A DNA stretch of 64,000 bases from Macrostomum lignano (lineage: Eukaryota): NCBI GenBank assembly GCA_002269645.1, contig NIVC01000111.1, positions 124,001 through 188,000 on the forward strand, read 5' to 3'. Made by a program: the position numbers and the translations under genes. The notes beneath the pieces were generated by a model, which was not told the origin of the DNA, searched no databases, and was given only the letters and a program-made list of their open reading frames with translations. Below, piece by piece: positions 26,870 through 56,988 of this stretch (positions within the stretch are counted from its first letter, which is position 1; each line of letters begins with the position of its first letter).

Positions 26870-27420
26870 CGACGGTAGTTTCTATGAAAAACAGCTCGAT
26901 TGTGGTAGTTTCTAGAAAAAACAAGTTAAATCCTGGTAGTTTTTAGCACAAGTAGTTCCCTTCTGGTAGTTTCTAGGAAAAGCGCTCAATTTTGGTAGTT
27001 TCTAGGAAAACAAGTTTAACTCTGGTAGTTTCTAGGAAAACTAATTCATTTCTGGTAGTTTCTAGGAAAACCTGTTTAATTCTGGTAGCTTCTAGGAAAC
27101 CCAGTTTAATTCTGGTAGTTTCTAGGAAAACCAGTTCACTTTTGGTAGGTTCTAGAAAAACCAGCTCGATTCTGGTAGTTTCTAGGAAAAACAAGTTAAA
27201 TCCTGGTAGTTTTTAGCAAAACTAGTTCACTTCTGGTAGTTTCTAGGAAAACCAGTTCACTCTTGGTAGTTTCGAGGAAAACCAGTTTAATTCTGGTAGT
27301 TTCTAGGAAAACCAGTTCAACTCTGCTAGTATCTGGGAAACCCAATTCAATCCTGGGAGTTTCTAGGAAAACCAGTTTGATTCTGGTATTTTCTAGGAAG
27401 TCTATTCGATTCTTATATTT
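26870..27420. repeat. Minisatellite, ~30-bp unit with core TGGTAGTTTCTAGGAAAA
   Basis: Core repeated about every 30 bp with a variable middle. Confidence 0.92.
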
Positions 27421-27849
27421 CTAAGAAAAGGTAAGTCACAGTGCAGTCAGAGAATCGGGCAGTAAACAGAAGCAAATCGAACGTTGCTAAGCGCTTATAC
27501 TGTGTGGATCGAACTAAAGACAACGAACAAAGACTTGCGCAAAAAACGAACAGTCAGTTTGTTAAAAAGTGAATACTTTCAAAATACTTAGCAAACAAAC
27601 AAGGCTACTCAGATTTAAGAGACACCTAAGAAGAAACACCTTAATCAACACCAGCTGAATATATATAGTGCTAGTCATGGCTCAATCAAAAACCGAACCT
27701 AAACCTGCTACGTCCATATTGACGAGGGGCAAAAAGCTAAAACTGCACTTCGGCAAATCAAAAGGCATGCAGAGACTGGGGCGCAACACCCGCCAGATAT
27801 AGAGAAGCAAAAATGATCTGCACTGCAAGGTGAGACTTCGACATACTAC

Positions 27850-28015
27850 AATCTGACTCTAGGACATGAAAATCTCATTGAGATGCTTGAATCTCTCTCT
27901 AAGATAATGTAATCTCACTATGCGATACTGCTGAAATCTCCCCCTGGGATAATGTAATCTCACCTTGAGATACTTAACTCTCCCTCTAAGATAATGTAAT
28001 CTCACCATGAGACAC
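27850..28015. repeat. Short degenerate tandem repeat (GATAATGTAATCTCAC core)
   Basis: Core at ~27903, ~27948 and ~27990. Confidence 0.6.
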
Positions 28016-28177
28016 TAAAACCCCCCTAAAATACTTAAAGGCTCCCCACGCAAAGATTCAGATAACTATTTTTTCATAATTAATTAACAAGCCATCAATG
28101 ACAAAGTCCTATTGATTTAAATTGAGTTCCCCAACCATGCTCAAACCAGGCTCGCACAAACGGCTGACCCCGCCCAA

Positions 28178-29130
28178 TCAGCATTCGCCGTCGGCATAGT
28201 CCTGCAGATAGGCATAGGCGGAGGTCAGCTTGCCGTTCTCGGCGATGGTGGCATCTTGAAGCACGCGGCTGCAGCCGCCGGGGGCCACGTGCGGCAGCAG
28301 CATCTCGGGCACCACCCGGCGCAGGAGGAGCTCGCCGAAGGTGCTGGACGAATCGCGCGGCAGTTCGATCGGCAGATTGTCAACTGACATCACGTCGACG
28401 TAGGCTTTGTCGATATTTCGATTGTCGGAGGGCAGCTCGCAACCGCTGCTGGGGTCGAAGGTGAAGATGGGATCGTCCACGGTGGTGGCTCGTAAAGTGG
28501 ACGGCAGCGAGGCCACCGGGGCGATGTCGCAGGTGATGTCGCCGACAAGTTGGATGCCGAAGTCGGGCCGGCGCATGTCCTCAAGCGTGAGCAGCGGGGC
28601 GCAGCGGTGGTCCCAAAAGATGCCGTTGATCAGCACGTTGGCCCTGGTGGCGAACGGCCAAATGACGCTGTGGTAGCCGGTTGGGTCGGAGAAAAACTCC
28701 ACGCTCCAGCCGGCCTCGGGGCCCTTGGCGGATGGGTGCAGGGCAGATTCGATGTACTGAAATTCGTGCATTTTTACGATTGTTTCCAGTTTTCCTCCGC
28801 TGTAGCCCGGAGCTGGGGTTGACAGTGATTCAGAGAAATAATATCCAGGACGATTTGAGTTGTCACGCAATCAGCCAATTGTGCGCTGGCTAAATGTCCG
28901 GATTTACAAGAATATTTTGATTTAATGCGAGGCTTTTGTAGACAGACAGAATTATGGATAGATAGAAGATAGAGATAGAGAAATATACTAACTAACAGAC
29001 AGACAGAGACAGACAGACAGACAGACAGACATAGAAACAGACAGGCAGAGGCAGACAGACATACACTAAGACAGACAGACAGATGGACGGACGAAGAGAC
29101 AGACAGACACATGCATAGAGTAAGACAGAA

Positions 29131-29177
<47 letters not shown>

Positions 29178-30995
29178 AAGACAGGGAAATCCCTTTACTG
29201 AATCAGTAAGCTAATAAAGGTGAATTAGCAGCAGGCATGGAATCAGCTCTAGAGACTGGCGGAATCCGCAGCCGCTACCTGTGAGCAAACAGACCTTGCG
29301 GAACAGCCAGTCCGCAGGCAGCTGGGTATACGTGCCCGCGTGCCCCGGCTGCCACTCGCGGGCCAGAAAGTCCTGCGGCGCCAGGCGCTCCAGGCCCAGC
29401 AGGTTAAGCAGTTCGCAGGCTCCGTTGCCAACCCGACCGTCGCCAGTGACAACCACGCGAAGATCTGGCGTTACGAGCAAAATTAAATGACTTTTCTATG
29501 TACAAGCAGGAGCCATAGCAACTGCTTTAGTTCGTATTTTTTGTAAACGCGAAAATTTCTTATTTTCTTGATTCTGTCTTGTTGAAGTTCACGAGGATCC
29601 GTCAAGCTGGACTCAAGTAGTTGATGCTTGCTCTCAAGTGCTCAAAAAGTGACATAAGGAATGCTGTCCTGGGAAAGTCCTTTTAGAACTGCTTTCCGAG
29701 CTTCGCGCGTTATTCTTATTTTCGATTTTCACTGTGCCAAGAAGATACCTACAGACAAGTGATTTTTAGTATAGTGGACTAGCAACCTGCGCCCCCCGTT
29801 GGGGAGGCAAAAAAGCAGTAATTTTTTTTACTTAACTACTTATATATCTGTCGACCTTATACAATCTTGTACAATTTTGTCACTATTGTTAGTTCCTTTA
29901 GGAAAACGATGTTCAAAGCCTCCCTTTGAGCCATGGCTTAACTTTTAACCTACCTTTGATGCTTCGCCTATCAACAACTTCCAACTGACCCTTGGCATCC
30001 CAGCATTGCTGCTAATCTCATGAGTTCTCCCTGCGAGCCTTGGCGTCTCAACAATTTTTTATGTATTAGGGGCATTTTCAAGTTTTTCCCTAGCTAAATA
30101 ATCTGTTCAACATAATTTCCCGCGGCAAGTCAGATATTGGAAGCATTGCTGGTCTTTTGTAAGAATTCAATATTTAACCTAGCGACTTTTCACATGCAGA
30201 AACATCCCATTATTGACGCTTAAACGTGGAATGTCTTCAAGATAAGGAGCAAATAAATCGACCTAAAATAAAGGCTCATCCGGACAAAAACTTCTTGGAA
30301 ATGCAATACCTCGTACCTGGGTGCCAAATAAGAAACCGTTTGAATTAAAATAATCGAAAATCGTCTCGTGTGACAACTTTTGGGTTTTCAAGGAACCAAA
30401 GACACAAACCTCTCATCATCTCCGGCTTGATCTCATCAGCGTAGCGCTTTTTGGCCGCCTCCCAGTCCTGCGCCTCCCTCAGCCGGAACAGCTGGCAGCA
30501 GCCAGAGCGCCGGCCCCAGGCCATCATGGTGTTGTGCGCGCCCACAATGCCCGCCCAGCGACCGAATCCTACCAGTCGGATACCTAGGGCGTCGCGCATG
30601 CACTCCCAGTCCATGAGGCGGATGCCTTTGTCCAGGACAGCTCTCAGCAGATCCCTATTGTGAGGCTGCTTCTTAATAGTGTGCGAGAACAGGGCGTAGG
30701 TGGCCCCGGGCTGCAGGGTGTCCACAGCAGGCGGCTTCACTCCGAGCAGGAAGTCGGCGCCAACTGCTTTCTCAACAATTTTCGCCCCAGCGGCCAAATA
30801 TTCTTTGTCGCTGTAGCAGCGAAATGGGCAGCTTTCAACAAGGATAGTGACTCTGGAGCCGTACAGGGAGAGGATCTCCTCACAGTTGGCCGGAGTCAGC
30901 GGAACCCGGGTCTCATCAGGAATCAGAGTCTCGCGGATGATGCCAATGGTGACTGGAGCACCAGAATTGTTAGCTTCAGTGTTTGTGCTGGACAT
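28178..30995 (-). CDS. Stand-alone saccharopine dehydrogenase/lysine-ketoglutarate reductase-like oxidoreductase (AlaDh/PNT superfamily), copy 1, 433 aa
   Basis: Exons 30995-30410, 29464-29295 and 28723-28178 join in frame (586+170+546 = 1302 nt) through GT-AG introns of phase 1 and 0. Motifs: IGIIRE..ETRVPLTP, LLGVK, FSHTIKKQPHN, DWECM, GFGRWAGIVGAHN, VVVTGDGRVG, LINGIFWD, DITCDI, SVDNLP, ATIAENGKLT..YAYLQDY. Confidence 0.92.
28995..29185. repeat. (GACA)n microsatellite inside intron 2 of copy 1
   Basis: Direct reading. Confidence 0.93.
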
Positions 30996-33900: not shown

Positions 33901-34553
33901 TATCAGGTCTCTGATTTAACGGCGCCAGCGCGCAATGAGATATTCTGACTGTAAAGGAGCAAAAGGCCAAGTACTGTAGGTGAATCAGCAGATAGAAAAA
34001 TGGCCACGTTTTGGTAAATATAATAATACGAAAAAGCTGACTACCATAATTACGCAATATGCAGATCGCAAAAAAATATCGTAAAAATAAAGTGCTTGGG
34101 CGGCGGGGTTACAACAAAAGCGCAAGCGCTGGGAAAAAGACGCTAAGGTTAAATTTTTATGTTACGATTAGAACAACAAAGCTTTAGCACGGAGTAGCAA
34201 AAAACTTAAAAAATGAAAAAAATATGTTTTATTCATCAATATAACAATTCGATTACTATAGAAAATAATAACATCGTACGAAACATCCAATACCGATTTT
34301 TTATTACGTCCGTAACCCGGAAAACGCGCGATCCGCATAGCAACAGGAGTTTCTAAGAAACAGGACGACAAAAATTGAATTTTATTAGTTGTTTAGTAAA
34401 ACTTCTGTTTTATTTTTTTACTCCCATTGCTATGTGGAAATGATAAGGCAAGAGAAATATAATTAATTATGATAGAAACATGAGAAAAACACCGTCACCT
34501 TTACTAATTTATTACTAAGGTTATTAAAAGTCTTGGTCAGTTCTTGTTGTCAA

Positions 34554-37500
34554 TCAGTCCTCGGCCGCGTTAACAAAGTCGCTCAGGTAGGCGAAAACGC
34601 TTGTCAGCTTGCCGGCTTCCGTGATGGTGGCGCCCTCCAGCACCGGGCTGACCCGCTGATTGCCATCAGCGGCAGCCGCCTGGAGGAACTCCGGCAGCAC
34701 CTTGTTGAGAATCATGTCGCCAAAGTCGCGGGAGGCATCCCGAGGCAGCTCGCTAGGCAGGTTGTCCACCGCCATGACGTCAACGGCAAGGGCTGAACGC
34801 GGCTCGCCTGGCTGCAGCTCGCGACCGAGCTCCGGGTCGAAGGTCAGCACCTTGGGTTTGGGAGAAGTCGGGCAGCCATTCTTACTCAGGATTCCACATT
34901 CAATTTGAGATCCTCAAGCTACGGTATGGATGGGTGCAAAGCGCAGGAAACTGCGCTCATATTTTTAATACCTCCATCTGGAACGGCTTGAATTAGATCG
35001 GGCAGGCAGGTTGACCTCGCTAGCAAGCAAGATGGCGAGCCGAACTCCAAGCACAGGCTGTGCAGGTGCTATTCACTTGCTCACAGCAGTTTGAGAGGGC
35101 GAGTGTTTTGTTTGAGAATTGGGTAGCTCAGACCATCTACTGCGGGTTAAATTTCTTGCTGCTACTATGGACAGAAGATGGCGACGATTCGAAAATATCA
35201 AATTTTACAATGGATTTTCTTCGCTACGGTATGCTGTTTAAATTGGGTAGGGTGATCCTTAACTATGGTATGATGATCCTTAACTATGGTATGGTGATCC
35301 TTAACTATGGTATGATGATCCTTAACTATGGTATGGTGATCCTTAACTATGGTATGGTGATCCTTAACTACGGTATGGTGATGCTTAACTACGGTATGGT
35401 GATTCTTAACCATGGTATGGTGATCCTTAACCATGGTATGGTGATCCTTAACTATGGTATGATGATCCTTAACTATGGTATGGTGATCCTTAACTATGGT
35501 ATGATGATCCTTAACTATGGTATGGTGATCCATAACTATGGTATGATGATCCTTAACTATGGTATGGTGATCCTTAACCATGGTATGGTGATCCTTAACT
35601 ATGGTATGATGATCATTAACTATGGTATGGTGATCCTTAACTATGGTATGGTGATCCTTAACTATGGTATGATGATCCTTAACCATGGTATGATGATCCT
35701 TAACTATGGTATGATGATCCTTAACCATGGTATGATGATCCTTAACTATGGTATGGTGATCCTTAACTATGGTATGGTGATCCTTAACCATGGTATGGTG
35801 ATCCTTAACTATGGTATGATGATCCTTAACCATGGTATGATGATCCTTAACTATGGTATGGTGATCCTTAACTATGGTATGGTGATCCTTAACCATGGTA
35901 TGGTGATCCTTAACTATGGTATGATGATCCTTAACCATGGTATGATGATCCTTAACTATGGTATGATGATCCTTAACCATGGTATGATGATCCTTAACTA
36001 TGGTATGGTGATCCTTAACTATGGTATGGTGATCCTTAACCATGGTATGGTGATCCTTAACTATGGTATGGTGATCCTTAACCATGGTATGGTGATCCTA
36101 ACTACGGTTGAACGTAGATTGTTAACTACGGTATGGGGATTCTTAACTACGGTATGGGGATTGTTAACTACGGTATGGGGATTCCTAACTACGGTATGGA
36201 GATTGTTAACTACGGTATGGGGATTCCTAACTACGGTATGGGGATTCTTAACTACGGTATGGAGATTGTTAACTACGGTATGGGGATTCTTAACTACGGT
36301 ATGGGGATTGTTAACTACGGTATGGGGATTCTTAACTACGGTATGGGGATTGTTAACTACGGTATGGGGATTCTTAACTACGGTATGGGGATTGTTAACT
36401 ACGGTATGGGGATTCTTAACTACGGTATGGGGATTGTTAACTACGGTATGGGGATTCTTAACTACGGTATGGAGATTGTTAACTACGGTATGGGGATTCC
36501 TAACTACGGTATGGGGATTCTTAACTACGGTATGGAGATTGTTAACTACGGTATGGGGATTCTTAACTACGGTATGGGGATTCCTAACTACGGTAGATTT
36601 TTAACTATGGTATGGAAGGGAATTTAGCTACGGTATGGGGGGAATAAGCTACGGTATGGGAGGGAATTTAGCTACGGTATGGGGGAATTTAGCTACGGTA
36701 TGGGAGGGAATTTAGCTACGGTATGGGGGAATTTAGCTACGGTATGGAAGGGAATTAGCTACGGTATGGAAGGGAATTTAGCTACGGTATGGAAGGGAAT
36801 TTAGCTACGGTATGGAAGGGAATTTAGCTACGGTATGGAAGGGAATAAGCTACGGTATGGAAGGGAATTTAGCTACGGTATGGAAGGGAATTTAGCTACG
36901 GTATGGAACGGAATTTAGCTACGGTATGGGGGAATTTAGCTACGGTATGGGAGGGAATTTAGCTACGGTATGGGAGGGAATTTAGCTACGGTATGGGAGG
37001 GAATTTAGCTACGGTATGGAAGGGAATTTAGCTACGGTATGGGGAATTTAGCTACGGTATGGAAGGGAATTTAGCTACGGTATGGAAGGGAATTTAGCTA
37101 CGGTATGGAAGGGAATTTAGCTACGGTATGGAAGGGAATTAGCTACGGTATGGAAGGGAATTTAGCTACGGTATGGAAGGGAATTTAGCTACGGTATGGA
37201 ACGGAATTTAGCTACGGTATGGAAGGGAATTTAGCTACGGTATGGAACGGAATTTAGCTACGGTATGGGGGAATTTAGCTACGGTATGGAAGGGAATTTA
37301 GCTACGGTATGGGAGGGAATTTAGCTACGGTATGGGGGGAATAAGCTACGGTATGGGGGAATTTAGCTACGGTATGGAAGGGAATTTAGCTACGGTATGG
37401 GGGAATTTAGCTACGGTATGGAAGGGAATTTAGCTACGGTATGGAAGGGAATATAGCTACGGTATGGAAGGGAATTTATCTACGGTATGGAAGGGAATTA

Positions 37501-40500: not shown

Positions 40501-43500
40501 AAGGGAATTTAGCTACGGTATGGAAGGGAATTTAGCTACGGTATGGAAGGGAATTTAGCTACGGTATGGAAGGGAATTTAGCTACGGTATGGAAGGGAAT
40601 TTAGCTACGGTATGGAAGGGAATTTAGCTACGGTATGGAAGGGAATTTAGCTACGGTATGGAAGGGAATTTAGCTACGGTATGGAAGGGAATTTAGCTAC
40701 GGTATGGAAGGGAATTTAGCTACGGTATGGAAGGGAATTTAGCTACGGTATGGAAGGGAATTTAGCTACGGTATGGAAGGGAATTTAGCTACGGTATGGG
40801 GGAATTTAGCTACGGTATGGAAGGGAATTTAGCTACGGTATGGAAGGGAATTTAGCTACGGTATGGAAGGGAATTTAGCTACGGTATGGAAGGGAATTTA
40901 GCTACGGTATGGAAGGGAATTTAGCTACGGTATGGAAGGGAATTTAGCTACGGTATGGAAGGGAATTTAGCTACGGTATGGAAGGGAATTTAGCTACGGT
41001 ATGGAAGGGAATTTAGCTACGGTATGGAAGGGAATTTAGCTACGGTATGGAAGGGAATTTAGCTACGGTATGGAAGGGAATTTAGCTACGGTATGGAAGG
41101 GAATTTAGCTACGGTATGGAAGGGAATTTAGCTACGGTATGGAAGGGAATTTAGCTACGGTATGGGGGAATTTAGCTACGGTATGGAAGGGAATTTAGCT
41201 ACGGTATGGAGGGAATTTAGCTACGGTATGGAAGGGAATTTAGCTACGGTATGGAAGGGAATTTAGCTACGGTATGGAGGGAATTTAGCTACGGTATGGG
41301 GGAATTTAGCTACGGTATGGAAGGGAATTTAGCTACGGTATGGAAGGGAATTTAGCTACGGTATGGAAGGGAATTTAGCTACGGTATGGAAGGGAATTTA
41401 GCTACGGTATGGGGGAATTTAGCTACGGTATGGAGGGAATTTAGCTACGGTATGGGGGAATTTAGCTACGGTATGGAAGGGAATTTAGCTACGGTATGGA
41501 AGGGAATTTAGCTACGGTATGGAAGGGAATTTAGCTACGGTATGGAAGGGAATTTAGCTACGGTATGGAAGGGAATTTAGCTACGGTATGGAAGGGAATT
41601 TAGCTACGGTATGGAAGGGAATTTAGCTACGGTATGGAAGGGAATTTAGCTACGGTATGGAAGGGAATTTAGCTACGGTATGGAAGGGAATTTAGCTACG
41701 GTATGGAAGGGAATTTAGCTACGGTATGGAAGGGAATTTAGCTACGGTATGGAAGGGAATTTAGCTACGGTATGGAAGGGAATTTAGCTACGGTATGGAA
41801 GGGAATTTAGCTACGGTATGGAAGGGAATTTAGCTACGGTATGGAAGGGAATTTAGCTACGGTATGGAAGGGAATTTAGCTACGGTATGGAAGGGAATTT
41901 AGCTACGGTATGGAAGGGAATTTAGCTACGGTATGGAAGGGAATTTAGCTACGGTATGGAAGGGAATTTAGCTACGGTATGGAAGGGAATTTAGCTACGG
42001 TATGGGGGAATTTAGCTACGGTATGGAAGGGAATTTAGCTACGGTATGGAGGGAATTTAGCTACGGTATGGAGGGAATTTAGCTACGGTATGGAGGGAAT
42101 TTAGCTACGGTATGGAGGGAATTTAGCTACGGTATGGAAGGGAATTTAGCTACGGTATGGAAGGGAATTTAGCTACGGTATGGAAGGGAATTTAGCTACG
42201 GTATGGAAGGGAATTTAGCTACGGTATGGAAGGGAATTTAGCTACGGTATGGAAGGGAATTTAGCTACGGTATGGGGGAATTTAGCTACGGTATGGAGGG
42301 AATTTAGCTACGGTATGGAAGGGAATTTAGCTACGGTATGGAAGGGAATTTAGCTACGGTAGGGAATTTAGCTACGGTATGGAAGGGAATTTAGCTACGG
42401 TATGGAAGGGAATTTAGCTACGGTATGGAAGGGAATTTAGCTACGGTATGGAAGGGAATTTAGCTACGGTATGGAAGGGAATTTAGCTACGGTATGGAAG
42501 GGAATTTAGCTACGGTATGGAAGGGAATTTAGCTACGGTATGGAAGGGAATTTAGCTACGGTATGGAAGGGAATTTAGCTACGGTATGGGGGAATTTAGC
42601 TACGGTATGGAAGGGAATTTATCTACGGTATGGAAGGGAATTAGCTACGGTATGGAAGGGAATTTAGCTACGGTATGGAAGGGAATTTAGCTACGGTATG
42701 GAAGGGAATTTAGCTACGGTATGGGGGAATTTAGCTACGGTATGGAAGGGAATTTAGCTACGGTATGGAAGGGAATTTAGCTACGGTATGGAAGGGAATT
42801 TAGCTACGGTATGGAAGGGAATTTAGCTACGGTATGGAAGGGAATTTAGCTACGGTATGGAAGGGAATTTAGCTACGGTATGGAAGGGAATTTAGCTACG
42901 GTATGGAACGGAATTTAGCTACGGTATGGAAGGGAATTTAGCTACGGTATGGAGGGAATTTAGCTACGGTATGGAAGGGAATTTAGCTACGGTATGGAAG
43001 GGAATTTAGCTACGGTATGGAGGGAATTTAGCTACGGTATGGAGGGAATTTAGCTACGGTATGGAGGGAATTTAGCTACGGTATGGGGGAATTTAGCTAC
43101 GGTATGGAAGGGAATTTAGCTACGGTATGGAAGGGAATTTAGCTACGGTATGGAAGGGAATTTAGCTACGGTATGGAAGGGAATTTAGCTACGGTATGGG
43201 GGAATTTAGCTACGGTATGGAGGGAATTTAGCTACGGTATGGAAGGGAATTTAGCTACGGTATGGAAGGGAATTTAGCTACGGTATGGGGGAATTTAGCT
43301 ACGGTATGGAAGGGAATTTAGCTACGGTATGGAAGGGAATTTAGCTACGGTATGGAAGGGAATTTAGCTACGGTATGGAAGGGAATTTAGCTACGGTATG
43401 GAAGGGAATTTAGCTACGGTATGGAAGGGAATTTAGCTACGGTATGGAAGGGAATTTAGCTACGGTATGGAAGGGAATTTAGCTACGGTATGGGGGAATT

Positions 43501-46500
43501 TAGCTACGGTATGGAAGGGAATTTAGCTACGGTATGGAAGGGAATTTAGCTACGGTATGGAAGGGAATTTAGCTACGGTATGGAAGGGAATTTAGCTACG
43601 GTATGGAAGGGAATTTAGCTACGGTATGGAAGGGAATTTAGCTACGGTATGGAAGGGAATTTAGCTACGGTATGGAAGGGAATTTAGCTACGGTATGGGG
43701 AATTTAGCTACGGTATGGAAGGGAATTTAGCTACGGTATGGAAGGGAATTTAGCTACGGTATGGAAGGGAATTTAGCTACGGTATGGAAGGGAATTTAGC
43801 TACGGTATGGAAGGGAATAGCTACGGTATGGAAGGGAATTTAGCTACGGTATGGAAGGGAATTTAGCTACGGTATGGAAGGGAATTTAGCTACGGTATGG
43901 AAGGGAATTTAGCTACGGTATGGGGGAATTTAGCTACGGTATGGAAGGGAATTTAGCTACGGTATGGAAGGGAATTTAGCTACGGTATGGAAGGGAATTT
44001 AGCTACGGTATGGAAGGGAATTTAGCTACGGTATGGAAGGGAATTTAGCTACGGTATGGAAGGGAATTTAGCTACGGTATGGAAGGGAATTTAGCTACGG
44101 TATGGAAGGGAATTTAGCTACGGTATGGAAGGGAATTTAGCTACGGTATGGAAGGGAATTTAGCTACGGTATGGAAGGGAATTTAGCTACGGTATGGAAG
44201 GGAATTTAGCTACGGTATGGAAGGGAATTTAGCTACGGTATGGAAGGGAATTTAGCTACGGTATGGAAGGGAATTTAGCTACGGTATGGGGGAATTTAGC
44301 TACGGTATGGAAGGGAATTTAGCTACGGTATGGAGGGAATTTAGCTACGGTATGGAGGGAATTTAGCTACGGTATGGAGGGAATTTAGCTACGGTATGGA
44401 AGGGAATTTAGCTACGGTATGGAGGGAATTTAGCTACGGTATGGGGGAATTTAGCTACGGTATGGAAGGGAATTTAGCTACGGTATGGAAGGGAATTTAG
44501 CTACGGTATGGAAGGGAATTTAGCTACGGTATGGAAGGGAATTTAGCTACGGTATGGGGGAATTTAGCTACGGTATGGAGGGAATTTAGCTACGGTATGG
44601 AAGGGAATTTAGCTACGGTATGGAAGGGAATTTAGCTACGGTATGGAAGGGAATTTAGCTACGGTATGGAAGGGAATTTAGCTACGGTATGGAGGGAATT
44701 TAGCTACGGTATGGAAGGGAATTTAGCTACGGTATGGAGGGAATTTAGCTACGGTATGGAAGGGAATTTAGCTACGGTATGGAAGGGAATTTAGCTACGG
44801 TATGGAAGGGAATTTAGCTACGGTATGGGGGAATTTAGCTACGGTATGGAAGGGAATTTAGCTACGGTATGGAAGGGAATTTAGCTACGGTATGGAAGGG
44901 AATTTAGCTACGGTATGGAAGGGAATTTAGCTACGGTATGGAAGGGAATTTAGCTACGGTATGGGGGAATTTAGCTACGGTATGGAAGGGAATTTAGCTA
45001 CGGTATGGAAGGGAATTTAGCTACGGTATGGAAGGGAATTTAGCTACGGTATGGAAGGGAATTTAGCTACGGTATGGGAATTTAGCTACGGTATGGAGGG
45101 AATTTAGCTACGGTATGGAAGGGAATTTAGCTACGGTATGGAGGGAATTTAGCTACGGTATGGAAGGGAATTTAGCTACGGTATGGAAGGGAATTTAGCT
45201 ACGGTATGGAAGGGAATTTAGCTACGGTATGGGGGAATTTAGCTACGGTATGGAAGGGAATTTAGCTACGGTATGGAAGGGAATTTAGCTACGGTATGGA
45301 AGGGAATTTAGCTACGGTATGGAAGGGAATTTAGCTACGGTATGGGGGAATTTAGCTACGGTATGGAAGGGAATTTAGCTACGGTATGGAAGGGAATTTA
45401 GCTACGGTATGGAAGGGAATTTAGCTACGGTATGGGGGAATTTAGCTACGGTATGGAAGGGAATTTAGCTACGGTATGGAAGGGAATTTAGCTACGGTAT
45501 GGAAGGGAATTTAGCTACGGTATGGAAGGGAATTTAGCTACGGTATGGAAGGGAATTTAGCTACGGTATGGAAGGGAATTTAGCTACGGTATGGAAGGGA
45601 ATTTAGCTACGGTATGGAAGGGAATTTAGCTACGGTATGGAAGGGAATTTAGCTACGGTATGGAAGGGAATTTAGCTACGGTATGGAAGGGAATTTAGCT
45701 ACGGTATGGGGAATTTAGCTACGGTATGGAAGGGAATTTAGCTACGGTATGGAAGGGAATTTAGCTACGGTATGGAAGGGAATTTAGCTACGGTATGGGG
45801 AATTTAGCTACGGTATGGAAGGGAATTTAGCTACGGTATGGAAGGGAATTTAGCTACGGTATGGAAGGGAATTTAGCTACGGTATGGAAGGGAATTTAGC
45901 TACGGTATGGAAGGGAATTTAGCTACGGTATGGAAGGGAATTTAGCTACGGTATGGAAGGGAATTTAGCTACGGTATGGAAGGGAATTTAGCTACGGTAT
46001 GGAGGGAATTTAGCTACGGTATGGAAGGGAATTTAGCTACGGTATGGAGGGAATTTAGCTACGGTATGGAGGGAATTTAGCTACGGTATGGAGGGAATTT
46101 AGCTACGGTATGGAAGGGAATTTAGCTACGGTATGGAAGGGAATTTAGCTACGGTATGGAAGGGAATTTAGCTACGGTATGGAAGGGAATTTAGCTACGG
46201 TATGGGAGGGAATTTAGCTACGGTATGGAGGGAATTTAGCTACGGTATGGAAGGGAATTAGCTACGGTATGGAAGGAATTTAGCTACGGTATGGAAGGGA
46301 ATTTAGCTACGGTATGGAAGGGAATTTAGCTACGGTATGGAAGGGAATTAGCTACGGTATGGAAGGGAATTTAGCTACGGTATGGAAGGGAATTTAGCTA
46401 CGGTATGGAAGGAATTTAGCTACGGTATGGAAGGGAATTTAGCTACGGTATGGAAGGGAATTTAGCTACGGTATGGAAGGGAATTTAGCTACGGTATGGA

Positions 46501-49500
46501 AGGGAATTTAGCTACGGTATGGAAGGGAATTTAGCTACGGTATGGAAGGGAATTTAGCTACGGTATGGAAGGGAATTTAGCTACGGTATGGAAGGGAATT
46601 TAGCTACGGTATGGAAGGGAATTTAGCTACGGTATGGAAGGGAATTTAGCTACGGTATGGAAGGGAATTTAGCTACGGTATGGAAGGAATTTAGCTACGG
46701 TATGGAAGGGAATTTAGCTACGGTATGGAAGGGAATTTAGCTACGGTATGGAAGGAATTTAGCTACGGTATGGAAGGGAATTTAGCTACGGTATGAAGGG
46801 AATTTAGCTACGGTATGGAAGGGAATTTAGCTACGGTATGGAAGGGAATTTAGCTACGGTATGGAAGGGAATTTAGCTACGGTATGGAAGGGAATTTAGC
46901 TACGGTATGGAAGGGAATTTAGCTACGGTATGGAAGGGAATTTAGCTACGGTATGGAAGGGAATTTAGCTACGGTATGGAAGGGAATTTAGCTACGGTAT
47001 GGAAGGAATTTAGCTACGGTATGGAAGGGAATTTAGCTACGGTATGGAAGGGAATTTAGCTACGGTATGGAAGGGAATTTAGCTACGGTATGGAAGGGAA
47101 TTTAGCTACGGTATGGAAGGGAATTTAGCTACGGTATGGAAGGGAATTTAGCTACGGTATGGAAGGGAATTTAGCTACGGTATGGAGGGAATTTAGCTAC
47201 GGTATGGGGGAATTTAGCTACGGTATGGAAGGGAATTTAGCTACGGTATGGAAGGGAATTTAGCTACGGTATGGAAGGAATTTAGCTACGGTATGGAAGG
47301 GAATTTAGCTACGGTATGGAAGGAATTTAGCTACGGTATGGGGGAATTTAGCTACGGTATGGGAAGGGAATTTAGCTACGGTATGGAGGGAATTTATCTA
47401 CGGTATGGAGGGAATTTAGCTACGGTATGGGAGGGAATTTAGCTACGGTATGGAGGGAATTTAGCTACGGTATGGAGGAATTTAGCTACGGTATGGGGGA
47501 ATTTAGCTACGGTATGGAAGGGAATTTAGCTACGGTATGGAAGGAATTTAGCTACGGTATGGAAGGAATTAGCTACGGTATGGAAGGGAATTTAGCTACG
47601 GTATGGGGGAATAGCTACGGTATGGGAGGGAATTTAGCTACGGTATGGAGGAATTTAGCTACGGTATGGAGGGAATTTAGCTACGGTATGGGGGAATTTA
47701 GCTACGGTATGGAAGGGAATTTAGCTACGGTATGGAAGGGAATTTAGCTACGGTATGGAAGGGAATTTATCTACGGTATGGAAGGGAATTTAGCTACGGT
47801 ATGGAACGGAATTTAGCTACGGTATGGAAGGGAATTTAGCTACGGTATGGAAGGGAATTTAGCTACGGTATGGAAGGGAATTTAGCTACGGTATGGAAGG
47901 GATTTAGCTACGGTATGGGGGAATTTAGCTACGGTATGGAAGGGAATTTAGCTACGGTATGGAAGGGAATTTAGCTACGGTATGGAAGGGAATTTAGCTA
48001 CGGTATGGAAGGGAATTTAGCTACGGTATGGAAGGGAATTTAGCTACGGTATGGGGGAATTTAGCTACGGTATGGAAGGGAATTTACTACGGTATGGAAG
48101 GGAATTAGCTACGTATGGAAGGGAATTTAGCTACGGAAGGGAATTTAGCTACGGTATGGAAGGGAATTTAGCTACGGTATGGAAGGGAATTTAGCTACGA
48201 TGGAAGGAAATACGGTATGGGGGAATTTAGCTACGGTATGGAAGCGGAATTTAGCTACGGTATGGAAGGGAATATAGCTACGGTATGGAAGGGAATTTAT
48301 CTACGGTATGGAAGGGAATTTAGCTACGGTATGGAACGGAATTTAGCTACGGTATGGAAGGGAATTTAGCTACGGTATGGAAGGGAATTTAGCTACGGTA
48401 TGGAAGGGAATTTAGCTACGGTATGGAAGGGAATTTAGCTACGGTATGGGGGAATTTAGCTACGGTATGGAAGGGAATTTAGCTACGGTATGGAAGGGAA
48501 TATAGCTACGGTATGCCGTATGGAAGGGAATTTAGCTACGGTATGGAAGGGAATTTAGCTACGGTATGGAAGGGAATTTAGCTACGGTATGGAAGGGAAT
48601 TTAGCTACGGTATGGGGGAATTTAGCTACGGTATGGAAGGGAATTTAGCTACGGTATGGAAGGGAATTTAGCTACGGTATGGAAGGGAATTTAGCTACGG
48701 TATGGAAGGGAATTTATCTACGGTATGGAAGGGAATTTAGCTACGGTATGGAAGGGAATTTAGCTACGGTATGGAAGGGAATTTAGCTACGGTATGGAAC
48801 GGAATTTAGCTACGGTATGGGGGAATTTAGCTACGGTATGGGAGGGAATTTAGCTACGGTATGGAGGAATTTATCTACGGTATGGGAGGGAATTTAGCTA
48901 CGGTATGGGAGGGAATTTAGCTACGGTATGGGAGGGAATTTAGCTACGGTATGGGAGGGAATTTAGCTACGGTATGGGGGAATTTAGCTACGGTATGGAA
49001 GGGAATTTAGCTACGGTATGGAAGGGAATTTATCTACGGTATGGAAGGGAATTAGCTACGGTATGGAAGGGAATTTAGCTACGGTATGGGGGGAATAAGC
49101 TACGGTATGGGAGGGAATTTAGCTACGGTATGGAAGGGAATTTAGCTACGGTATGGAACGGAATTTAGCTACGGTATGGGGGAATTTAGCTACGGTATGG
49201 GAGGGAATTTAGCTACGGTATGGGAGGGAATTTATCTACGGTATGGGAGGGAATTTAGCTACGGTATGGGAGGGAATTTAGCTACGGTATGGGAGGGAAT
49301 TTAGCTACGGTATGGGAGGGAATTTAGCTACGGTATGGGGGAATTTAGCTACGGTATGGAAGGGAATTTAGCTACGGTATGGAAGGGAATTTATCTACGG
49401 TATGGAAGGGAATTAGCTACGGTATGGAAGGGAATTTAGCTACGGTATGGGGGGAATAAGCTACGGTATGGGAGGGAATTTAGCTACGGTATGGAAGGGA

Positions 49501-52376
49501 ATTTAGCTACGGTATGGAAGGAATTTAGCTACGGTATGGAAGGGAATTTAGCTACGGTATGGAAGGGAATATAGCTACGGTATGGAAGGGAATTTATCTA
49601 CGGTATGGAAGGGAATTTAGCTACGGTATGGAACGGAATTTAGCTACGGTATGGAAGGGAATTTAGCTACGGTATGGAACGGAATTTAGCTACGGTATGG
49701 AAGGGAATTAGCTACGGTATGGAACGGAATTTTGCTACGGTATGGGGGAATTTAGCTACGGTATGGAAGGGAATTTAGCTACGGTATGGAAGGGAATTTA
49801 TCTACGGTATGGAAGGGAATTTAGCTACGGTATGGAACGGAATTTAGCTACGGTATGGAAGGGAATTTAGCTACGGTATGGAAGGGAATTTAGCTACAGT
49901 ATGGGGGAATTTAGCTACGGTATGGAAGGGAATTTAGCTACGGTATGGAAGGGAATATAGCTACGGTATGGAAGGGAATTTATCTACGGTATGGAAGGGA
50001 ATTAGCTACGGTATGGAAGGGAATTTAGCTACGGTATGGAAGGGAATTTAGCTACGGTATGGAAGGGAATTTAGCTACGGTATGGAAGGGATTTAGCTAC
50101 GGTATGGAAGGGAATTTAGCTACGGTATGGAAGGGAATTTAGCTACGGTATGGAAGGGAATTTAGCTACGGTATGGTGTTCTAAACTAAGGAAAGGGAAT
50201 TCTAAAACCTCAGAATTGGGATTCTTGAATTTTTTGGTGCGAGGATTTGGGACATCCAGACTCATAACTAATGGGCCAAGAGTCCTATAAAATCTCAAAC
50301 TCGGAGTAAAAATCCCACAATCCTCACCGGATCCTTCACAACGGTGGGCCGCACAGTGCAGGGCAGCGAGGCCACCGGGGCGATGTCGCAGGTGATGTCG
50401 CCAATCAGTCGGACGGCCATCTCCGGCTGGCACATCTGCTCGATGGTGAGCAACGGGCCGCAGCGGTTGTCCCAGTACATGCCGTTGATCAGAATGTTGG
50501 CCTTGACCATGTAGGGCCAGGCGATGCTGTGGTAGCCGGTGGGGTTGGCATAGTAGTCGGGACTCCAGCTGTTGTCCGGGCCAAGGCGGAACAGGTGGTC
50601 GGCGGGCAGCTGGGCGTACACGGGCGGATGATCGGCCGATGACCAGTCGCGGGCCAGCAGATCGGCTGGCGAGATCTTTTCGAAGCCGAGCAAATCCAGA
50701 ATCTCTCTGCAGCCGGTGCCGACCCGACCGCTGCCGGTGAGGACAACTCGCATGCCTGCGGAATGGCGAGGTCGAGTATTAGCGATCATATAAAATACAC
50801 TGGCAGTCTTAGCTCTTCCCCCAGTTGTTGATAAGCGCTAGATAAGCAAATCATTGTTTTTTAGTAAAATCACTAAATGAAAATTGCAAATAGAAAACAA
50901 TAGGAAAAAAACTTATCTAGCACAGATATCTAATTTTCAAGCATGAGATATCGGCTTTCCCACTTTGAATTGCCCCCCGCATTCTCAGCCTGGCATCTCA
51001 GCAATTCCCCATATGACCCTTAGCATCTCAGCAATTCTCTTTTATGACCATTGGCATTTCAGCAGTTCCTTTTATGACCTATAATATCTAAAGAATTCCC
51101 TCTATGACCATAGAATCTCTTTATGAAACTTGGCATCTCATGGAATTCCCTTATGACAACTTGGCATCTCAGGAATTCCTCATAGAGCATAACCTTTGGT
51201 GCGTTAAAGCCTAATTTTAGCGCTTAACACCACTCCTCAGGCTAACGTTTGTACACCTTTGTGTGTGTACCTGCGGACATATCCGTGTGCGTGCCCAGGC
51301 GTCAGGTGTCCAGGCTGGCTGCAGGTCGGCTGGCGATTGCCTTGATTTGCATCAAAGCCCCCTGACTAAGGTGGGGAAGAGACGAGAGAGCGAAAACAGT
51401 AATAATTAGACAGCTCTACTCAAATCAGAGGAGCCGCTACACTCACCGCGCAGCAGTTCAATGGGCAGCTCCTCGCGGTAGCGCTTTTGCGCCGCCTCCC
51501 AGTCGGCGATTTTGCACAGGCGGAACAGATCAAAGCGGCCAGTCTTTTTACCCCAAGCCGCTATGGTGTTGTGCGCCCCGACTATGCCGGCCCAGCGGCC
51601 GAAACCAATTAGGCGAACTTTGTTCTCGTCGCGCATAAATTCCCAATCCATTAGGCGTATACCTTTGGCTAGGATTGCTCTAAGCAGCGTGCGATTGTGC
51701 GGCTGCCGCTTGGCTGTGTGCGAGAACATCACGTAGGTTGAGTTGTCCTTCAGCGACTCAATGGAAGCCGCCTTGACACCCAGTAGCAAATCTGCGTTTT
51801 CAGCCTGCGATTTTTTAATATTTCAATTTTGTAACATTTGTGTTTGAAAGAATAAAATCATAGAAAAAATGCCTTCAGTTCTACTAACAGTACCTTAAAC
51901 AAGTAGGTAATAAAAATTGCAGTTCAAACTTTTTTGATGCAAATTGAACATATTTTGCAACAAAAAAACTTCTGAACTGAACTGGAAAATATAAAATCTG
52001 TACAGATTCAAAGCTGAAAAATTAACTGCATACAATTATCCAGTAAATAATCACTGCATTAAGTCCTAATATACTAGCATGCAAGTTCCATAGCCTGAAA
52101 TGAATACTACAGAACATATCGGCAAATAAAGAAAAATATGGTCTCTATATACAAGTATATACTTACCTTGTCAACTAGCTTTATTCCAAGATCTTCATAT
52201 TCCTTGTCACTATAGCAGCGAAATGGATATTTCTCAACCACAATGGCCACTTTGTCACCATATTGAGCTAGTATCTTGGCACATTGGTTAGGAGTCAATG
52301 GAGTCCTAGTTTCATTTGGCACCATAGTCTCACGCAGGACACCAATGGTGAATGGCTTAGGCTTGTTGTTAGTCAT
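34554..52376 (-). CDS. Stand-alone saccharopine dehydrogenase-like oxidoreductase, copy 2, 430 aa
   Basis: Exons 52376-52167, 51804-51447, 50755-50328 and 34850-34554 (210+358+428+297 = 1293 nt, in frame). Donors GTAAGT, GTGAGT, GTGAGG; acceptors CAG, CAG, AAG. The junction KDP|VLTFDP aligns with DDPIFTFDP of copy 1, and the motif set is the same. Confidence 0.9.
35251..36110. repeat. Satellite block A, 21-bp unit GGTGATCCTTAACTATGGTAT
   Basis: Direct reading; variants ATG/GTG and CTA/CCA. Confidence 0.97.
36119..36600. repeat. Satellite block B, 21-bp unit GGGGATT(C/G)TTAACTACGGTAT
   Basis: Direct reading; TTCTT and TTGTT variants often alternate. Confidence 0.97.
36601..50176. repeat. Satellite block C, 23-bp unit GGAAGGGAATTTAGCTACGGTAT with 21/22-bp variants (~13.6 kb)
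   Basis: Direct reading; variants GGGGGAATTT and GGAGGGAATTT. No unique spacers. Confidence 0.98.
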
Positions 52377-56634: not shown

Positions 56635-56685
56635 TAGACGGACAGACAGACAGACGGACAGACAGACAGACAGACGGACAGACAG

Positions 56686-56766
<81 letters not shown>

Positions 56767-56797
56767 AAGACAGACAGACAGACAGACAGACAGACAC

Positions 56798-56892
<95 letters not shown>

Positions 56893-56893
56893 C

Positions 56894-56924
<31 letters not shown>

Positions 56925-56987: not shown

Positions 56988-56988
<1 letters not shown>

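What the first reader, a model, noticed from the sequence alone, without database searches (positions are those of the whole stretch)
28178..52376. Tandem pair of intron-bearing, bacterial-type stand-alone saccharopine-dehydrogenase-like genes: candidate domesticated horizontal transfer
Both ~430-aa proteins are complete single-enzyme AlaDh/PNT-fold genes that stop right after ATIxExGKLT..(Y/F)AYLxD(Y/F), with no fused second domain. Animal AASS is a bifunctional LKR-SDH fusion with GTGNVS, ICDISAD and an LRLLALGHHTPF insert. These proteins instead have TGxGRVG and DITCDI and lack the insert, as I recall for Bacteroidetes SDH-like proteins (CDD cd05199). Equivalents of yeast Lys1 Arg18, Lys77 (GVK), His96 (FSH), Glu122 and Arg131 are retained. 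Spliceosomal introns and host-type repeats argue against contamination. The genes could give an animal a new lysine/saccharopine or opine-type (keto acid plus amine, NAD(P)H) reaction, for example for anaerobic redox balance, with the paralogs diverged in substrate. The function is inference.
Basis: partly seen in the sequence, partly recalled or inferred. Interest (0 to 1): 0.82.

Follow-up and report, generated by a model that had tools for sequence, protein, structure and literature searches.

The report
Bacterial lysine-enzyme genes in a flatworm
The flatworm Macrostomum lignano carries two neighbouring, intron-containing genes for a saccharopine/lysine-type dehydrogenase that came from Bacteroidota-like bacteria rather than from animal ancestors, a well-supported and apparently unreported case of bacteria-to-animal gene transfer whose biochemical role is still untested.

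Summary
Two head-to-tail genes on the minus strand (A: 28178-30995, 3 exons, 433 aa; B: 34554-52376, 4 exons, 430 aa; 57% identical) assemble with GT-AG introns. Each encodes a complete stand-alone AlaDH/PNT-fold enzyme with no second domain.

The window is Macrostomum lignano. A metazoan SID-1 gene lies next door. A homeologous contig carries the same pair with the same splice sites.

The best non-self relatives are ~400-aa bacterial proteins (41-48% identity), mostly Saprospiraceae, Lewinellaceae, Chitinophagales and some cyanobacteria. Eukaryotic bifunctional AASS reaches only about 33-36%.

In a 151-sequence tree, A+B are monophyletic (100%) and sister to a bacterial metagenome protein (90-95%). 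They sit deep inside the bacterial family, away from all AASS-type sequences.

The closest solved structure is the human AASS lysine-oxoglutarate reductase domain (TM 0.80). The equivalents of yeast Lys1 catalytic residues R18, K77, H96, K99, E122 and R131 are present in both genes. All 24 family-conserved columns are retained, and dN/dS between homeologs is about 0.11-0.14.

Verdict: a domesticated, duplicated bacterial gene under selection. Its substrate, cofactor and physiological role remain inference. Whether the worm also has a canonical AASS, and whether other Macrostomum species share the genes, could not be tested.

The parts
30410..30995 (-). Gene A exon 1 (ATG at 30995; codons 1-195 plus 1 nt)
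   Evidence: GT donor. The protein equals UniProt A0A1I8I4M3.
29465..30409 (-). Gene A intron 1 (945 bp, phase 1, in codon D196). Same position and phase as gene B intron 2.
   Evidence: D196 of A aligns with G190 of B. Conserved in the homeolog L004.
29295..29464 (-). Gene A exon 2 (Rossmann motif TGDGRVG)
28724..29294 (-). Gene A intron 2 (571 bp), containing an (ACAG)n microsatellite at 28995-29184
   Evidence: The same microsatellite type occurs elsewhere in the window and in L004.
28178..28723 (-). Gene A exon 3, including the TGA stop (28178-28180). An alternative in-frame acceptor at 28756 was rejected.
   Evidence: The 433-aa form matches the annotated proteins P0002 and P0124 and gene B, which has no intron here.
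52167..52376 (-). Gene B exon 1 (ATG at 52376). Unusually AT-rich (GC 0.42).
51447..51804 (-). Gene B exon 2 (GVK, FSHTAK, MDWE and RLIGFG catalytic motifs)
50756..51446 (-). Gene B intron 2 (691 bp, phase 1, in codon G190). Shared with gene A intron 1.
50328..50755 (-). Gene B exon 3 (TGSGRVG, DITCDI)
34851..50327 (-). Gene B intron 3 (15,477 bp). Almost wholly satellite DNA: 21-bp unit x64 at 35246-36595 and 23-bp unit x~600 at 36600-50176.
   Evidence: The same intron is 1,755 bp with about 250 bp of the 23-bp satellite in homeolog L004.
34554..34850 (-). Gene B exon 4, including the TGA stop. AATAAA lies 41 nt downstream.

Best explanation
A stand-alone gene of about 400 codons was transferred into the Macrostomum lineage from a Bacteroidota-like bacterium. 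It encodes an NAD(P)-dependent lysine-2-oxoglutarate reductase / saccharopine dehydrogenase-type enzyme (AlaDH/PNT fold). The nearest relatives are Chitinophagales, Saprospiraceae and Lewinellaceae.

After transfer the gene acquired at least one spliceosomal intron and host-like GC3. It then duplicated in tandem into paralogs A and B (57% identity), which later gained further private introns. The whole pair was multiplied again by the recent genome duplication of M. lignano, giving three copies of the pair in the public assembly. Both paralogs are kept by purifying selection.

Inferred mechanism (not shown): each protein catalyses the reversible reaction amine (most likely the L-lysine epsilon-amino group) + 2-oxo acid (most likely 2-oxoglutarate) + NAD(P)H <-> saccharopine-type imino acid + NAD(P)+. 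In B/A numbering, Lys81/87 and His99/105 would act as the acid-base pair and Arg24/30 and Arg134/140 would hold the carboxylates.

The proteins have no room for a mitochondrial presequence. They also lack the Ser-Arg pair that gives human LOR its NADPH preference. I therefore guess a cytosolic, NAD(H)-leaning enzyme that is separate from the mitochondrial bifunctional AASS route of other animals.

Shown: gene structure, host integration, bacterial affinity, fold, retention of catalytic residues, selection. Inferred: substrate, cofactor, direction, location, physiological role.
For: Host and integration:
- P0001 and P0002 are M. lignano proteins.
- A SID-1 gene (PF13965, E 5e-62) lies at 18963-22513.
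- GT-AG introns are conserved in homeolog L004.
- Satellites sit inside the introns.
- GC3 is 0.72-0.77, against 0.65-0.80 for SID-1.

Bacterial affinity:
- All named hits in the top 120 are bacterial, at 41-47% identity and E 1e-110 to 1e-96.
- The 80 best loci in 185,579 prokaryote species genomes are mostly Saprospiraceae, Lewinellaceae and Chitinophagales.
- The contexts of the four top-ranked hits I looked up (P0003-P0006) are compact prokaryotic loci.
- In 1.84 billion representatives, the best bifunctional AASS-type hit scores 194 bits against 346 bits for the best bacterial representative (P0003 scored 387 bits).
- Profile scores are 436/426 bits for the bacterial 400-aa family, against 298/277 for AASS-type.
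- In the NJ tree, A+B have 100% support, are sister to bacterial P0003 at 90-95%, and sit about 13 nodes deep in a 92-sequence clade that excludes AASS-type sequences.

Single transfer followed by duplication:
- A+B are monophyletic, share three small insertions, and share one intron at the same codon and phase.

Function:
- PDB sequence hits to the human AASS LKR domain have E 1e-33 to 1e-38, and to Lys1 about 1e-13 to 1e-14.
- The AF2 model (pLDDT 86.6) matches human LOR at TM 0.80 and Lys1 at 0.67-0.77.
- The Lys1 equivalents R18, K77, H96, K99, E122 and R131 are retained.
- All 24 columns that are at least 95% conserved in 89 bacterial representatives are retained in both paralogs.

Selection:
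- dN/dS is 0.108 (A) and 0.138 (B) between homeologs. There are 12 synonymous and 5 non-synonymous differences, binomial p about 1e-4.
Against: - No enzyme assay or RNA evidence was available here, so function and expression are inferred.
- The bacterial family has no characterised member that I could find. It also has no conserved operon partner; only a convergent purC appears, in 12 of 78 loci. The substrate assignment therefore rests on homology to LOR and Lys1 at only 21-33% identity.
- The trees are neighbour-joining only. A first tree with a single human outgroup placed A+B as sister to all sampled bacteria. I attribute this to long-branch attraction, because it disappeared with broader sampling.
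- The sister sequence P0003 is itself an orphan (at most 57% identity to anything), so the donor is not pinned down.
- No orthologue from another Macrostomum species or other flatworm appeared in the databases. The age of the transfer is therefore untested.
- Intergenic DNA between the homeologs is as similar (99.1%) as the exons. Exon conservation alone is thus not evidence of selection; only the synonymous/non-synonymous ratio is.
Confidence: 0.8

Rival explanations
1. Vertical descent. The genes are relics of an ancient eukaryotic stand-alone LKR-like gene that was lost from nearly all other eukaryotes and animals.
For: A first NJ tree rooted on human AASS alone put A+B outside all sampled bacteria. 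At three loop regions the Macrostomum proteins are longer than the bacterial ones, and so closer in length to AASS.
Against: - With 151 sequences A+B nest deep within the bacterial family and are sister to a bacterial contig.
- The extra residues are shorter than the AASS insertions and do not align with them, and 5 of 90 bacterial representatives have similar lengths.
- No other animal sequence appears above AASS level in 1.84 billion representatives.
- The only other eukaryote-sourced member, from a Rhizamoeba transcriptome, falls elsewhere in the tree, next to Cytophagales.
Confidence: 0.04
2. Indirect transfer. The gene reached Macrostomum from another eukaryote (prey alga, protist or symbiont host) that had itself taken it from bacteria.
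For: A member of the family occurs in a Rhizamoeba saxonica transcriptome, so eukaryotic carriers may exist. The long stem of A+B (0.21) leaves room for unsampled intermediates.
Against: The sister of A+B lies on a compact bacterial contig with sulfotransferase, Usp, GlmS and BamH genes. No eukaryote-sourced protein appears among the top 120 hits of B, P0003 or the Rhizamoeba protein, other than the Macrostomum proteins and the Rhizamoeba query itself.
Confidence: 0.08
3. Bacterial contamination or a chimeric assembly rather than true animal genes.
For: The proteins are bacterial-like, and the public M. lignano assemblies come from animals cultured with diatoms and bacteria (background knowledge).
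Against: - There are seven GT-AG introns in total, one of which holds 15 kb of host satellite.
- The splice sites are identical in a second contig that is 1-6% diverged.
- Three copies of the pair lie on contigs of 103, 354 and 702 kb.
- A metazoan SID-1 gene lies about 6 kb away.
- GC3 is host-like.
Confidence: 0.01
4. Same origin but a different job. The enzymes no longer act on lysine/saccharopine. They may act as opine-type dehydrogenases, condensing another amino acid and keto acid as an NADH sink in hypoxic sediment, or run in the lysine-releasing direction, with A and B specialised on different substrates.
For: - A and B have diverged to 57% identity, yet both are kept.
- The Glu78 equivalent of Lys1, which is Glu in the bacterial consensus (GVKEV), is Pro in A and Ala in B.
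- There is no Ser-Arg NADPH pair, and an Asp follows the beta-2 strand.
- There is no fused or adjacent SDH to consume saccharopine.
Against: The residues that bind both carboxylates of the 2-oxoglutarate moiety in Lys1 (R18, R131), as well as K99, are intact. Known animal opine dehydrogenases belong to a different family, and Pfam reports only AlaDh_PNT_N for these proteins. There is no direct evidence for any substrate.
Confidence: 0.3

Closest known systems
Uncharacterised ~400-aa stand-alone AlaDh_PNT_N proteins of Bacteroidota and some cyanobacteria. These are annotated automatically as 'NAD(P)-dependent oxidoreductase', 'alanine dehydrogenase' or 'saccharopine dehydrogenase (NAD+, L-lysine-forming)'. 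Examples are the Chitinophagales, Saprospiraceae and Lewinellaceae MAG proteins and P0003.
   Same: End-to-end collinear alignment at 41-48% identity, the same single-domain architecture, all family-conserved columns retained, the highest profile score, and phylogenetic nesting.
   Different: - The Macrostomum genes carry spliceosomal introns.
- They have an 8-14 residue N-terminal extension.
- They have three small loop insertions (+4, +3/4 and +5/7 aa).
- Pro or Ala replaces the consensus Glu after the catalytic Lys.
- GC3 is host-like.
- They form a tandem pair, whereas in bacteria the gene is single.
Lysine-2-oxoglutarate reductase (LOR/LKR) domain of animal bifunctional AASS (human, PDB 8E8T/8E8U/8DDA)
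   Same: It is the best solved-structure match by sequence (E 1e-33 to 1e-38) and by fold (TM 0.80). It shares the GVK, FSHTIK, DxE, R-x-x-x-FG and DNLP motifs.
   Different: - Only about 25-30% identity.
- No fused SDH domain.
- No LRLLALGHHTPF-type insertion.
- TGxGRVG instead of GTGNVS.
- Pro-Ala instead of the Ser266-Arg267 NADPH determinants (PMC9490328).
- No presequence.
- Falls in a different clade.
Fungal Lys1, saccharopine dehydrogenase (NAD+, L-lysine-forming), EC 1.5.1.7 (PDB 2Q99, 2QRJ, 3UGK)
   Same: A stand-alone single enzyme of similar size. The catalytic Lys77/His96 pair and R18, K99, E122 and R131 all have equivalents. Fold TM is 0.67-0.77.
   Different: About 21% identity. 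The DHLPS motif is DNLP here. Lys1 works in lysine biosynthesis via alpha-aminoadipate, a pathway animals lack (background knowledge).
Other documented bacteria-to-animal transfers of metabolic enzymes (for example arthropod beta-cyanoalanine synthase, PMC4011162; nematode cellulases, PMC8826503)
   Same: The same hallmarks are present: a bacterial phylogenetic position, acquired introns, host flanking genes, duplication after transfer, and purifying selection.
   Different: The recipient phylum (Platyhelminthes) and the enzyme family differ. I found no paper reporting this case.

Membership tests
AlaDH/PNT superfamily | Pfam AlaDh_PNT_N domain above the gathering score | tested here: met
   PF05222 scores 72.3 and 68.8 bits against a cut-off of 30.4.
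LKR / Lys1-type saccharopine dehydrogenase (EC 1.5.1.7/1.5.1.8) | Closest fold and sequence match is LOR/Lys1 rather than alanine dehydrogenase or transhydrogenase dI | tested here: met
   PDB phmmer gives AASS LKR E 1e-33 to 1e-38, Lys1 about 1e-13 to 1e-14, and AlaDH/PNT at least 6e-5. Foldseek TM is 0.80, 0.67-0.77 and about 0.6 respectively.
LKR / Lys1-type saccharopine dehydrogenase (EC 1.5.1.7/1.5.1.8) | Acid-base pair Lys77/His96, and carboxylate-binding Arg18/Arg131, Lys99 and Glu122 (Lys1 numbering) | tested here: met
   The alignment to 2QRJ gives A: R30, K87, H105, K108, E131, R140 and B: R24, K81, H99, K102, E125, R134. The roles of these residues are as cited in PMC9490328, refs 18-20.
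LKR / Lys1-type saccharopine dehydrogenase (EC 1.5.1.7/1.5.1.8) | Catalysis of lysine + 2-oxoglutarate <-> saccharopine | not testable with these tools
   Needs a recombinant enzyme assay.
Animal/plant bifunctional AASS (LKR-SDH) | C-terminal saccharopine dehydrogenase domain (PF03435/PF16653) fused to LKR | tested here: not met
   The stop codons fall 5-6 residues after the conserved (Y/F)AYLxD(Y/F) C-terminal motif. tblastn with four SDH halves finds nothing in the window. P0200 shows what the fused form looks like.
Animal/plant bifunctional AASS (LKR-SDH) | Groups phylogenetically with eukaryotic AASS-LKR | tested here: not met
Animal/plant bifunctional AASS (LKR-SDH) | Ser-Arg NADPH determinant (human S266/R267) | tested here: not met
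   The aligned residues are Pro-Ala in both A and B. The determinant is described in PMC9490328. The alignment is uncertain by +/-1.
Bacterial ~400-aa stand-alone LKR-like family (Bacteroidota type) | End-to-end alignment, best profile score, and retention of family-conserved columns | tested here: met
   436/426 bits against 326/307 and 298/277; 24 of 24 columns.
   No CDD library was available. NCBIfam gave only weak sub-threshold pntA hits.
Horizontally acquired, domesticated animal gene | Nested within a donor-domain clade with support | tested here: met
   Sister to bacterial P0003 at 90-95% NJ bootstrap, inside a 92-sequence bacterial clade. No maximum-likelihood tree could be run.
Horizontally acquired, domesticated animal gene | Physically integrated: spliceosomal introns, host repeats and host neighbour genes, reproducible in independent contigs | tested here: met
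Horizontally acquired, domesticated animal gene | Absent from related animals | tested here: inconclusive
   No other metazoan member appeared in 5.8 billion or 1.84 billion protein sets. Coverage of other Macrostomum and flatworm species in those sets is unknown.
Horizontally acquired, domesticated animal gene | Purifying selection / intact ORFs | tested here: met
   dN/dS is 0.11-0.14 with 12 synonymous and 5 non-synonymous differences. Both paralogs are intact in at least two loci.
Horizontally acquired, domesticated animal gene | Transcription and correct splicing | not tested
   No RNA-seq was accessible. The annotated public models match my exon models.
Invertebrate opine dehydrogenases (octopine/alanopine/strombine DH family) | Octopine-dehydrogenase-type domain | tested here: not met
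   The Pfam scan reports only AlaDh_PNT_N. Any opine-like role would be by analogy, not by membership.

The most novel reading that the evidence does not exclude
The acquired enzymes give Macrostomum a cytosolic, NAD(H)-linked saccharopine or opine-type reaction that no other animal has. This could be a fermentative NADH sink in hypoxic intertidal sediment, or a route that releases or salvages lysine from saccharopine. The two old paralogs would have diverged to different amine and keto-acid substrates. Bacterial gene transfer would then have created a new branch of animal amino-acid or redox metabolism.
Probability: 0.2. Interest if true: 0.75.

Novelty: new member of a known kind. Interest (0 to 1): 0.58.

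Why it matters
Well-supported bacteria-to-animal transfers that are integrated, intron-bearing, duplicated and under selection are still few. I found none reported for this enzyme family, and no paper reporting this case in Macrostomum lignano.

M. lignano is a transgenic and RNAi-tractable model, so the physiological value of an acquired metabolic gene can be tested directly. The gene family is a large bacterial family, commonest in Bacteroidota, with no characterised member, so an assay of the worm enzymes would also help annotate those bacterial genes.

The case also shows intron gain, tandem duplication and a 15-kb satellite expansion inside a foreign-derived gene.

Tried and rejected
1. 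First NJ tree (183 sequences, human AASS as the only outgroup). It placed A+B as sister to all bacteria. I rejected it as a long-branch artefact after adding 150 representatives that span the family.
2. Eukaryote-like loop lengths. Three Macrostomum-specific insertions looked as if they might be shared with AASS. The re-alignment shows they are shorter and not positionally homologous, and similar lengths occur in some bacteria.
3. Alternative acceptor at 28756 for gene A exon 3 (445-aa form). Rejected because the annotated proteins and gene B support the 433-aa form.
4. Gene-neighbourhood inference of function in 78 bacterial loci. There is no conserved operon partner and no adjacent SDH or aminoadipate-semialdehyde dehydrogenase.
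5. Co-transferred DNA. The neighbours of P0003 (sulfotransferase, Usp and two small ORFs) have no trace in the window.
6. A hidden SDH domain or further copies in the window: none.
7. Canonical AASS in M. lignano. There is no way to query the species directly. The best AASS-type representative (P0200) is protist-like, so it was not a useful probe.
8. Literature. Nothing was found on this transfer or these gene IDs. Neshich et al. 2013 on bacterial LKR/SDH is not held.
9. A look-up of a contig for P0002 failed.
10. Cofactor call from sequence. It gives only a weak lean to NAD(H), and the alignments disagree by one residue.


Full report
**What is in the sequence.**
The interval holds two genes on the minus strand in head-to-tail order. 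Gene B lies upstream and gene A about 3.5 kb downstream.
- Gene A: exons 30995-30410, 29464-29295 and 28723-28178. It encodes 433 aa.
- Gene B: exons 52376-52167, 51804-51447, 50755-50328 and 34850-34554. It encodes 430 aa.

Every intron begins with GT and ends with AG. The two proteins are 57% identical over their whole length. My gene A model is identical to UniProt A0A1I8I4M3, and my gene B model equals PAA90382.1 over all 430 residues. An alternative acceptor that would add 11 residues to A was rejected for that reason. Pfam reports only the AlaDh_PNT_N domain. Both reading frames stop 5-6 residues after the conserved (Y/F)AYLxD(Y/F) C-terminal motif. Searching the window with four SDH-domain halves of bifunctional enzymes finds nothing.

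**Whose genome it is, and whether the genes are really part of it.**
- The best database hits are Macrostomum lignano proteins.
- About 6 kb from gene A lies a SID-1 dsRNA-channel gene (PF13965, E 5e-62). By background knowledge this is a metazoan family.
- A public contig of assembly GCA_002269645.1 (locus L004) carries the same tandem pair. All seven exons are collinear, the splice dinucleotides are the same and the reading frames are intact, while introns and flanks differ by 1-6%.
- Consecutive accession numbers show three copies of the pair, on contigs of 103, 354 and 702 kb. This is as expected for the duplicated genome of this species.
- Intron 3 of gene B is 15,477 bp. It consists almost wholly of a 21-bp satellite (64 copies) and a 23-bp satellite (about 600 copies). 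In the homeolog the same intron is 1,755 bp with about 250 bp of the 23-bp repeat.
- Intron 2 of gene A contains an (ACAG)n microsatellite of a type found elsewhere in the window and in L004.
- Third-position GC is 0.77 (A) and 0.72 (B), within the range of the SID-1 exons (0.65-0.80).

Contamination or chimeric assembly is excluded.

**Where the genes came from.**
- Against 5.8 billion protein clusters, the next hits after the Macrostomum proteins are about 400-aa proteins at 41-47% identity (E 1e-110 to 1e-96). Every named one is bacterial: Chitinophagales, Saprospiraceae, Lewinellaceae and some cyanobacteria.
- The 80 best loci among 185,579 prokaryotic species genomes give the same picture.
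- The four top-ranked hits I looked up (P0003-P0006) lie on compact, intron-free contigs with typical bacterial neighbours.
- An exhaustive HMMER scan of 1.84 billion representatives found 1,937 relatives. The bacterial ~400-aa family fills roughly ranks 2 to 75. It is followed by 430-450-aa bacterial LKR-like proteins, and only then by bifunctional eukaryotic LKR-SDH proteins. The best of these scores 194 bits, against 346 bits for the best bacterial representative; P0003 scored 387 bits in the earlier search.
- Profiles built from the three groups score the worm proteins at 436/426, 326/307 and 298/277 bits respectively.

**The tree, and an initial contradiction.**
My first neighbour-joining tree used 180 close bacterial sequences and human AASS as the single outgroup. 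It placed A+B as sister to all the bacteria, which could have meant an old eukaryotic lineage. I also noticed that at three loops the worm proteins are longer than the bacterial ones.

With the broader 151-sequence set the picture changed:
- A+B are monophyletic in 100% of bootstraps.
- They are sister to P0003 in 90-95% of bootstraps. P0003 is a protein on a bacterial metagenome contig flanked by sulfotransferase, Usp, GlmS and BamH genes.
- They lie about 13 nodes deep inside a 92-sequence clade with a long stem (0.21) that excludes all AASS-type and 430-aa sequences.
- Dropping P0003 leaves them inside the same family.
- The loop insertions are shorter than the AASS insertions and do not align with them, and similar lengths occur sporadically among the bacteria.

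I therefore treat the first tree as a long-branch artefact. I could not run a likelihood method, and this is the main technical caveat.

P0003 has no close relative. Its best matches are Chitinophagales MAG proteins at 55-57%. The donor can therefore be named only as a Bacteroidota, probably Chitinophagales-like, lineage.

The only other eukaryote-sourced member I found comes from a Rhizamoeba saxonica transcriptome. It sits elsewhere in the tree, next to Cytophagales, with no eukaryotic neighbours. It is either an independent transfer or prey contamination. There is no eukaryotic clade.

**History after arrival.**
A and B share three small insertions, and they share one intron at exactly the same codon and phase (D196 in A, G190 in B, phase 1). 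The other three introns are private to one paralog. The simplest order of events is:
1. One transfer.
2. Gain of the shared intron.
3. Tandem duplication, long enough ago for 43% of residues to change.
4. Further intron gains.
5. Multiplication with the genome duplication.
6. A copy-specific satellite expansion in intron 3 of B.

The shared intron abuts the 4-residue insertion, which hints that the intron's gain or sliding created the insertion. This is inference.

**Are the genes functional?**
- Between the window and L004, gene A shows 3 synonymous and 1 non-synonymous difference, and gene B shows 9 and 4. This gives dN/dS of 0.108 and 0.138. Twelve synonymous changes out of 17 has a binomial probability of about 1e-4 under neutrality.
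- Intergenic DNA is as similar as the exons (99.1%), so I do not use exon identity itself as evidence.
- All 24 alignment columns that are at least 95% conserved in 89 bacterial representatives are retained in both paralogs, despite their mutual divergence.

**What the proteins probably do.**
- By sequence, the nearest solved structures are the lysine-2-oxoglutarate reductase domain of human AASS (E 1e-33 to 1e-38) and then yeast Lys1 (about 1e-13 to 1e-14).
- An AlphaFold model (pLDDT 86.6) matches human LOR at TM 0.80 and Lys1 at 0.67-0.77. Alanine dehydrogenase and transhydrogenase dI match less well.
- The alignment to Lys1 shows equivalents of the acid-base pair Lys77/His96 and of Arg18, Lys99, Glu122 and Arg131 in both proteins. 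The roles of these residues are as cited in PMC9490328, refs 18-20.

The most likely chemistry is therefore the reversible reductive condensation of lysine with 2-oxoglutarate to saccharopine.

The following points are weaker:
- The residues aligned with human Ser266/Arg267 are Pro-Ala followed by Asp. Those two residues explain the NADPH preference of LOR. The substitution leans towards NAD(H).
- The catalytic domain starts 9-15 residues from the N-terminus, which leaves no room for a mitochondrial presequence. I therefore guess a cytosolic location.
- The Glu that follows the catalytic Lys in the bacterial consensus and in Lys1 is Pro in A and Ala in B. This could alter pH dependence or substrate preference.
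- In bacteria the gene has no conserved partner. One Flavobacteriales lineage fuses it to an M3 peptidase, a faint hint of a link to peptide or amino-acid catabolism.

Substrate, direction and physiological role remain open.

**Comparison with what is known, and novelty.**
The genes are members of the AlaDH/PNT superfamily and of a large uncharacterised bacterial family, commonest in Bacteroidota, related to LOR/Lys1. They are not members of the animal AASS family: they have no SDH fusion, they fall in the wrong clade and they lack the NADPH determinants. They are also not members of the invertebrate opine dehydrogenase family.

As an evolutionary event this is a new example of a known kind, namely domesticated bacteria-to-animal transfer. 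The proteins are in public databases as 'AlaDh_PNT_N domain-containing' or hypothetical proteins. Five literature searches found no report of their bacterial origin.

**What remains undone.**
I could not determine any of the following:
- whether M. lignano also has a canonical AASS;
- whether other Macrostomum species carry the genes;
- whether the genes are transcribed.

These points, together with a likelihood phylogeny and an enzyme assay, are the decisive next steps.

Noticed in passing
window 34851-50327 (satellites 35246-36595 and 36600-50176); L004 13399-13647: Intron 3 of gene B holds about 600 copies of a 23-bp satellite and 64 copies of a 21-bp satellite (15.5 kb in total). The homeologous copy has only about 11 copies of the 23-bp unit in a 1.76-kb intron. 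This is either a copy-specific satellite expansion inside an intron of a functional gene or a collapse in the older assembly.
   Followed up: partly
window 18963-22513 (+): Two long ORFs form a SID-1 (dsRNA-gated channel, PF13965, E 5e-62) gene. This is the nearest host gene to the transferred pair, with GC3 of 0.65-0.80.
   Followed up: partly
window 52167-52376: Exon 1 of gene B has GC 0.42, whereas exons 2-4 have 0.56-0.65 and all of gene A has 0.62. The reason is unknown; it may be local AT-rich context or a more recent remodelling of the 5' end.
   Followed up: no
window 29465-30409 and 50756-51446: The one intron shared by A and B lies directly next to a 4-residue insertion that is specific to the Macrostomum proteins (ELPIELLRG / EIKPEMMRD against the shorter bacterial loop). 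This suggests that intron gain or sliding created the insertion.
   Followed up: no
window 58351-59527 (ORF 58294-59646): A 16-bp satellite (74 copies, strong GC and AT skew) creates a spurious 450-aa open reading frame.
   Followed up: no
window 25686-26295, 26874-27399, 28995-29184, 56636-56988: There are 31-bp and 30-bp minisatellites just downstream of gene A, and (ACAG)n/(AGAC)n microsatellites in gene A intron 2 and upstream of gene B. L004 has a tetranucleotide array of about 2.5 kb at the corresponding upstream position.
   Followed up: partly
window 61618-61989 (-) and 12697-12969 (+): Transposon remnants: a weak, sub-threshold match to a DDE_3 transposase fragment (24.4 bits, gathering cut-off 28.6) and an HTH_38 helix-turn-helix fragment, Tc1/mariner-like.
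   Followed up: no
protein P0129 (EukProt, Rhizamoeba saxonica transcriptome): This is a member of the same bacterial ~400-aa family from an amoebozoan transcriptome, on a long branch. Its nearest relatives are Cytophagales (Algivirga, 54%). Its first 84 residues are a duplicated copy of the true N-terminus, probably an assembly artefact. It is either an independent transfer or prey contamination.
   Followed up: partly
protein P0192 (1052 aa, Schleiferiaceae; 106 members in its 90% cluster): A natural fusion of the LKR-like enzyme with an M3 family metallopeptidase (Dcp type). This is a possible Rosetta-stone link between this uncharacterised family and peptide or amino-acid catabolism.
   Followed up: partly
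window 27778-28177 and 34154-34553: Gene B has AATAAA 41 nt after its stop codon. Gene A has no AATAAA or ATTAAA within 400 nt of its stop, so its 3' end is formed differently or lies further away.
   Followed up: no
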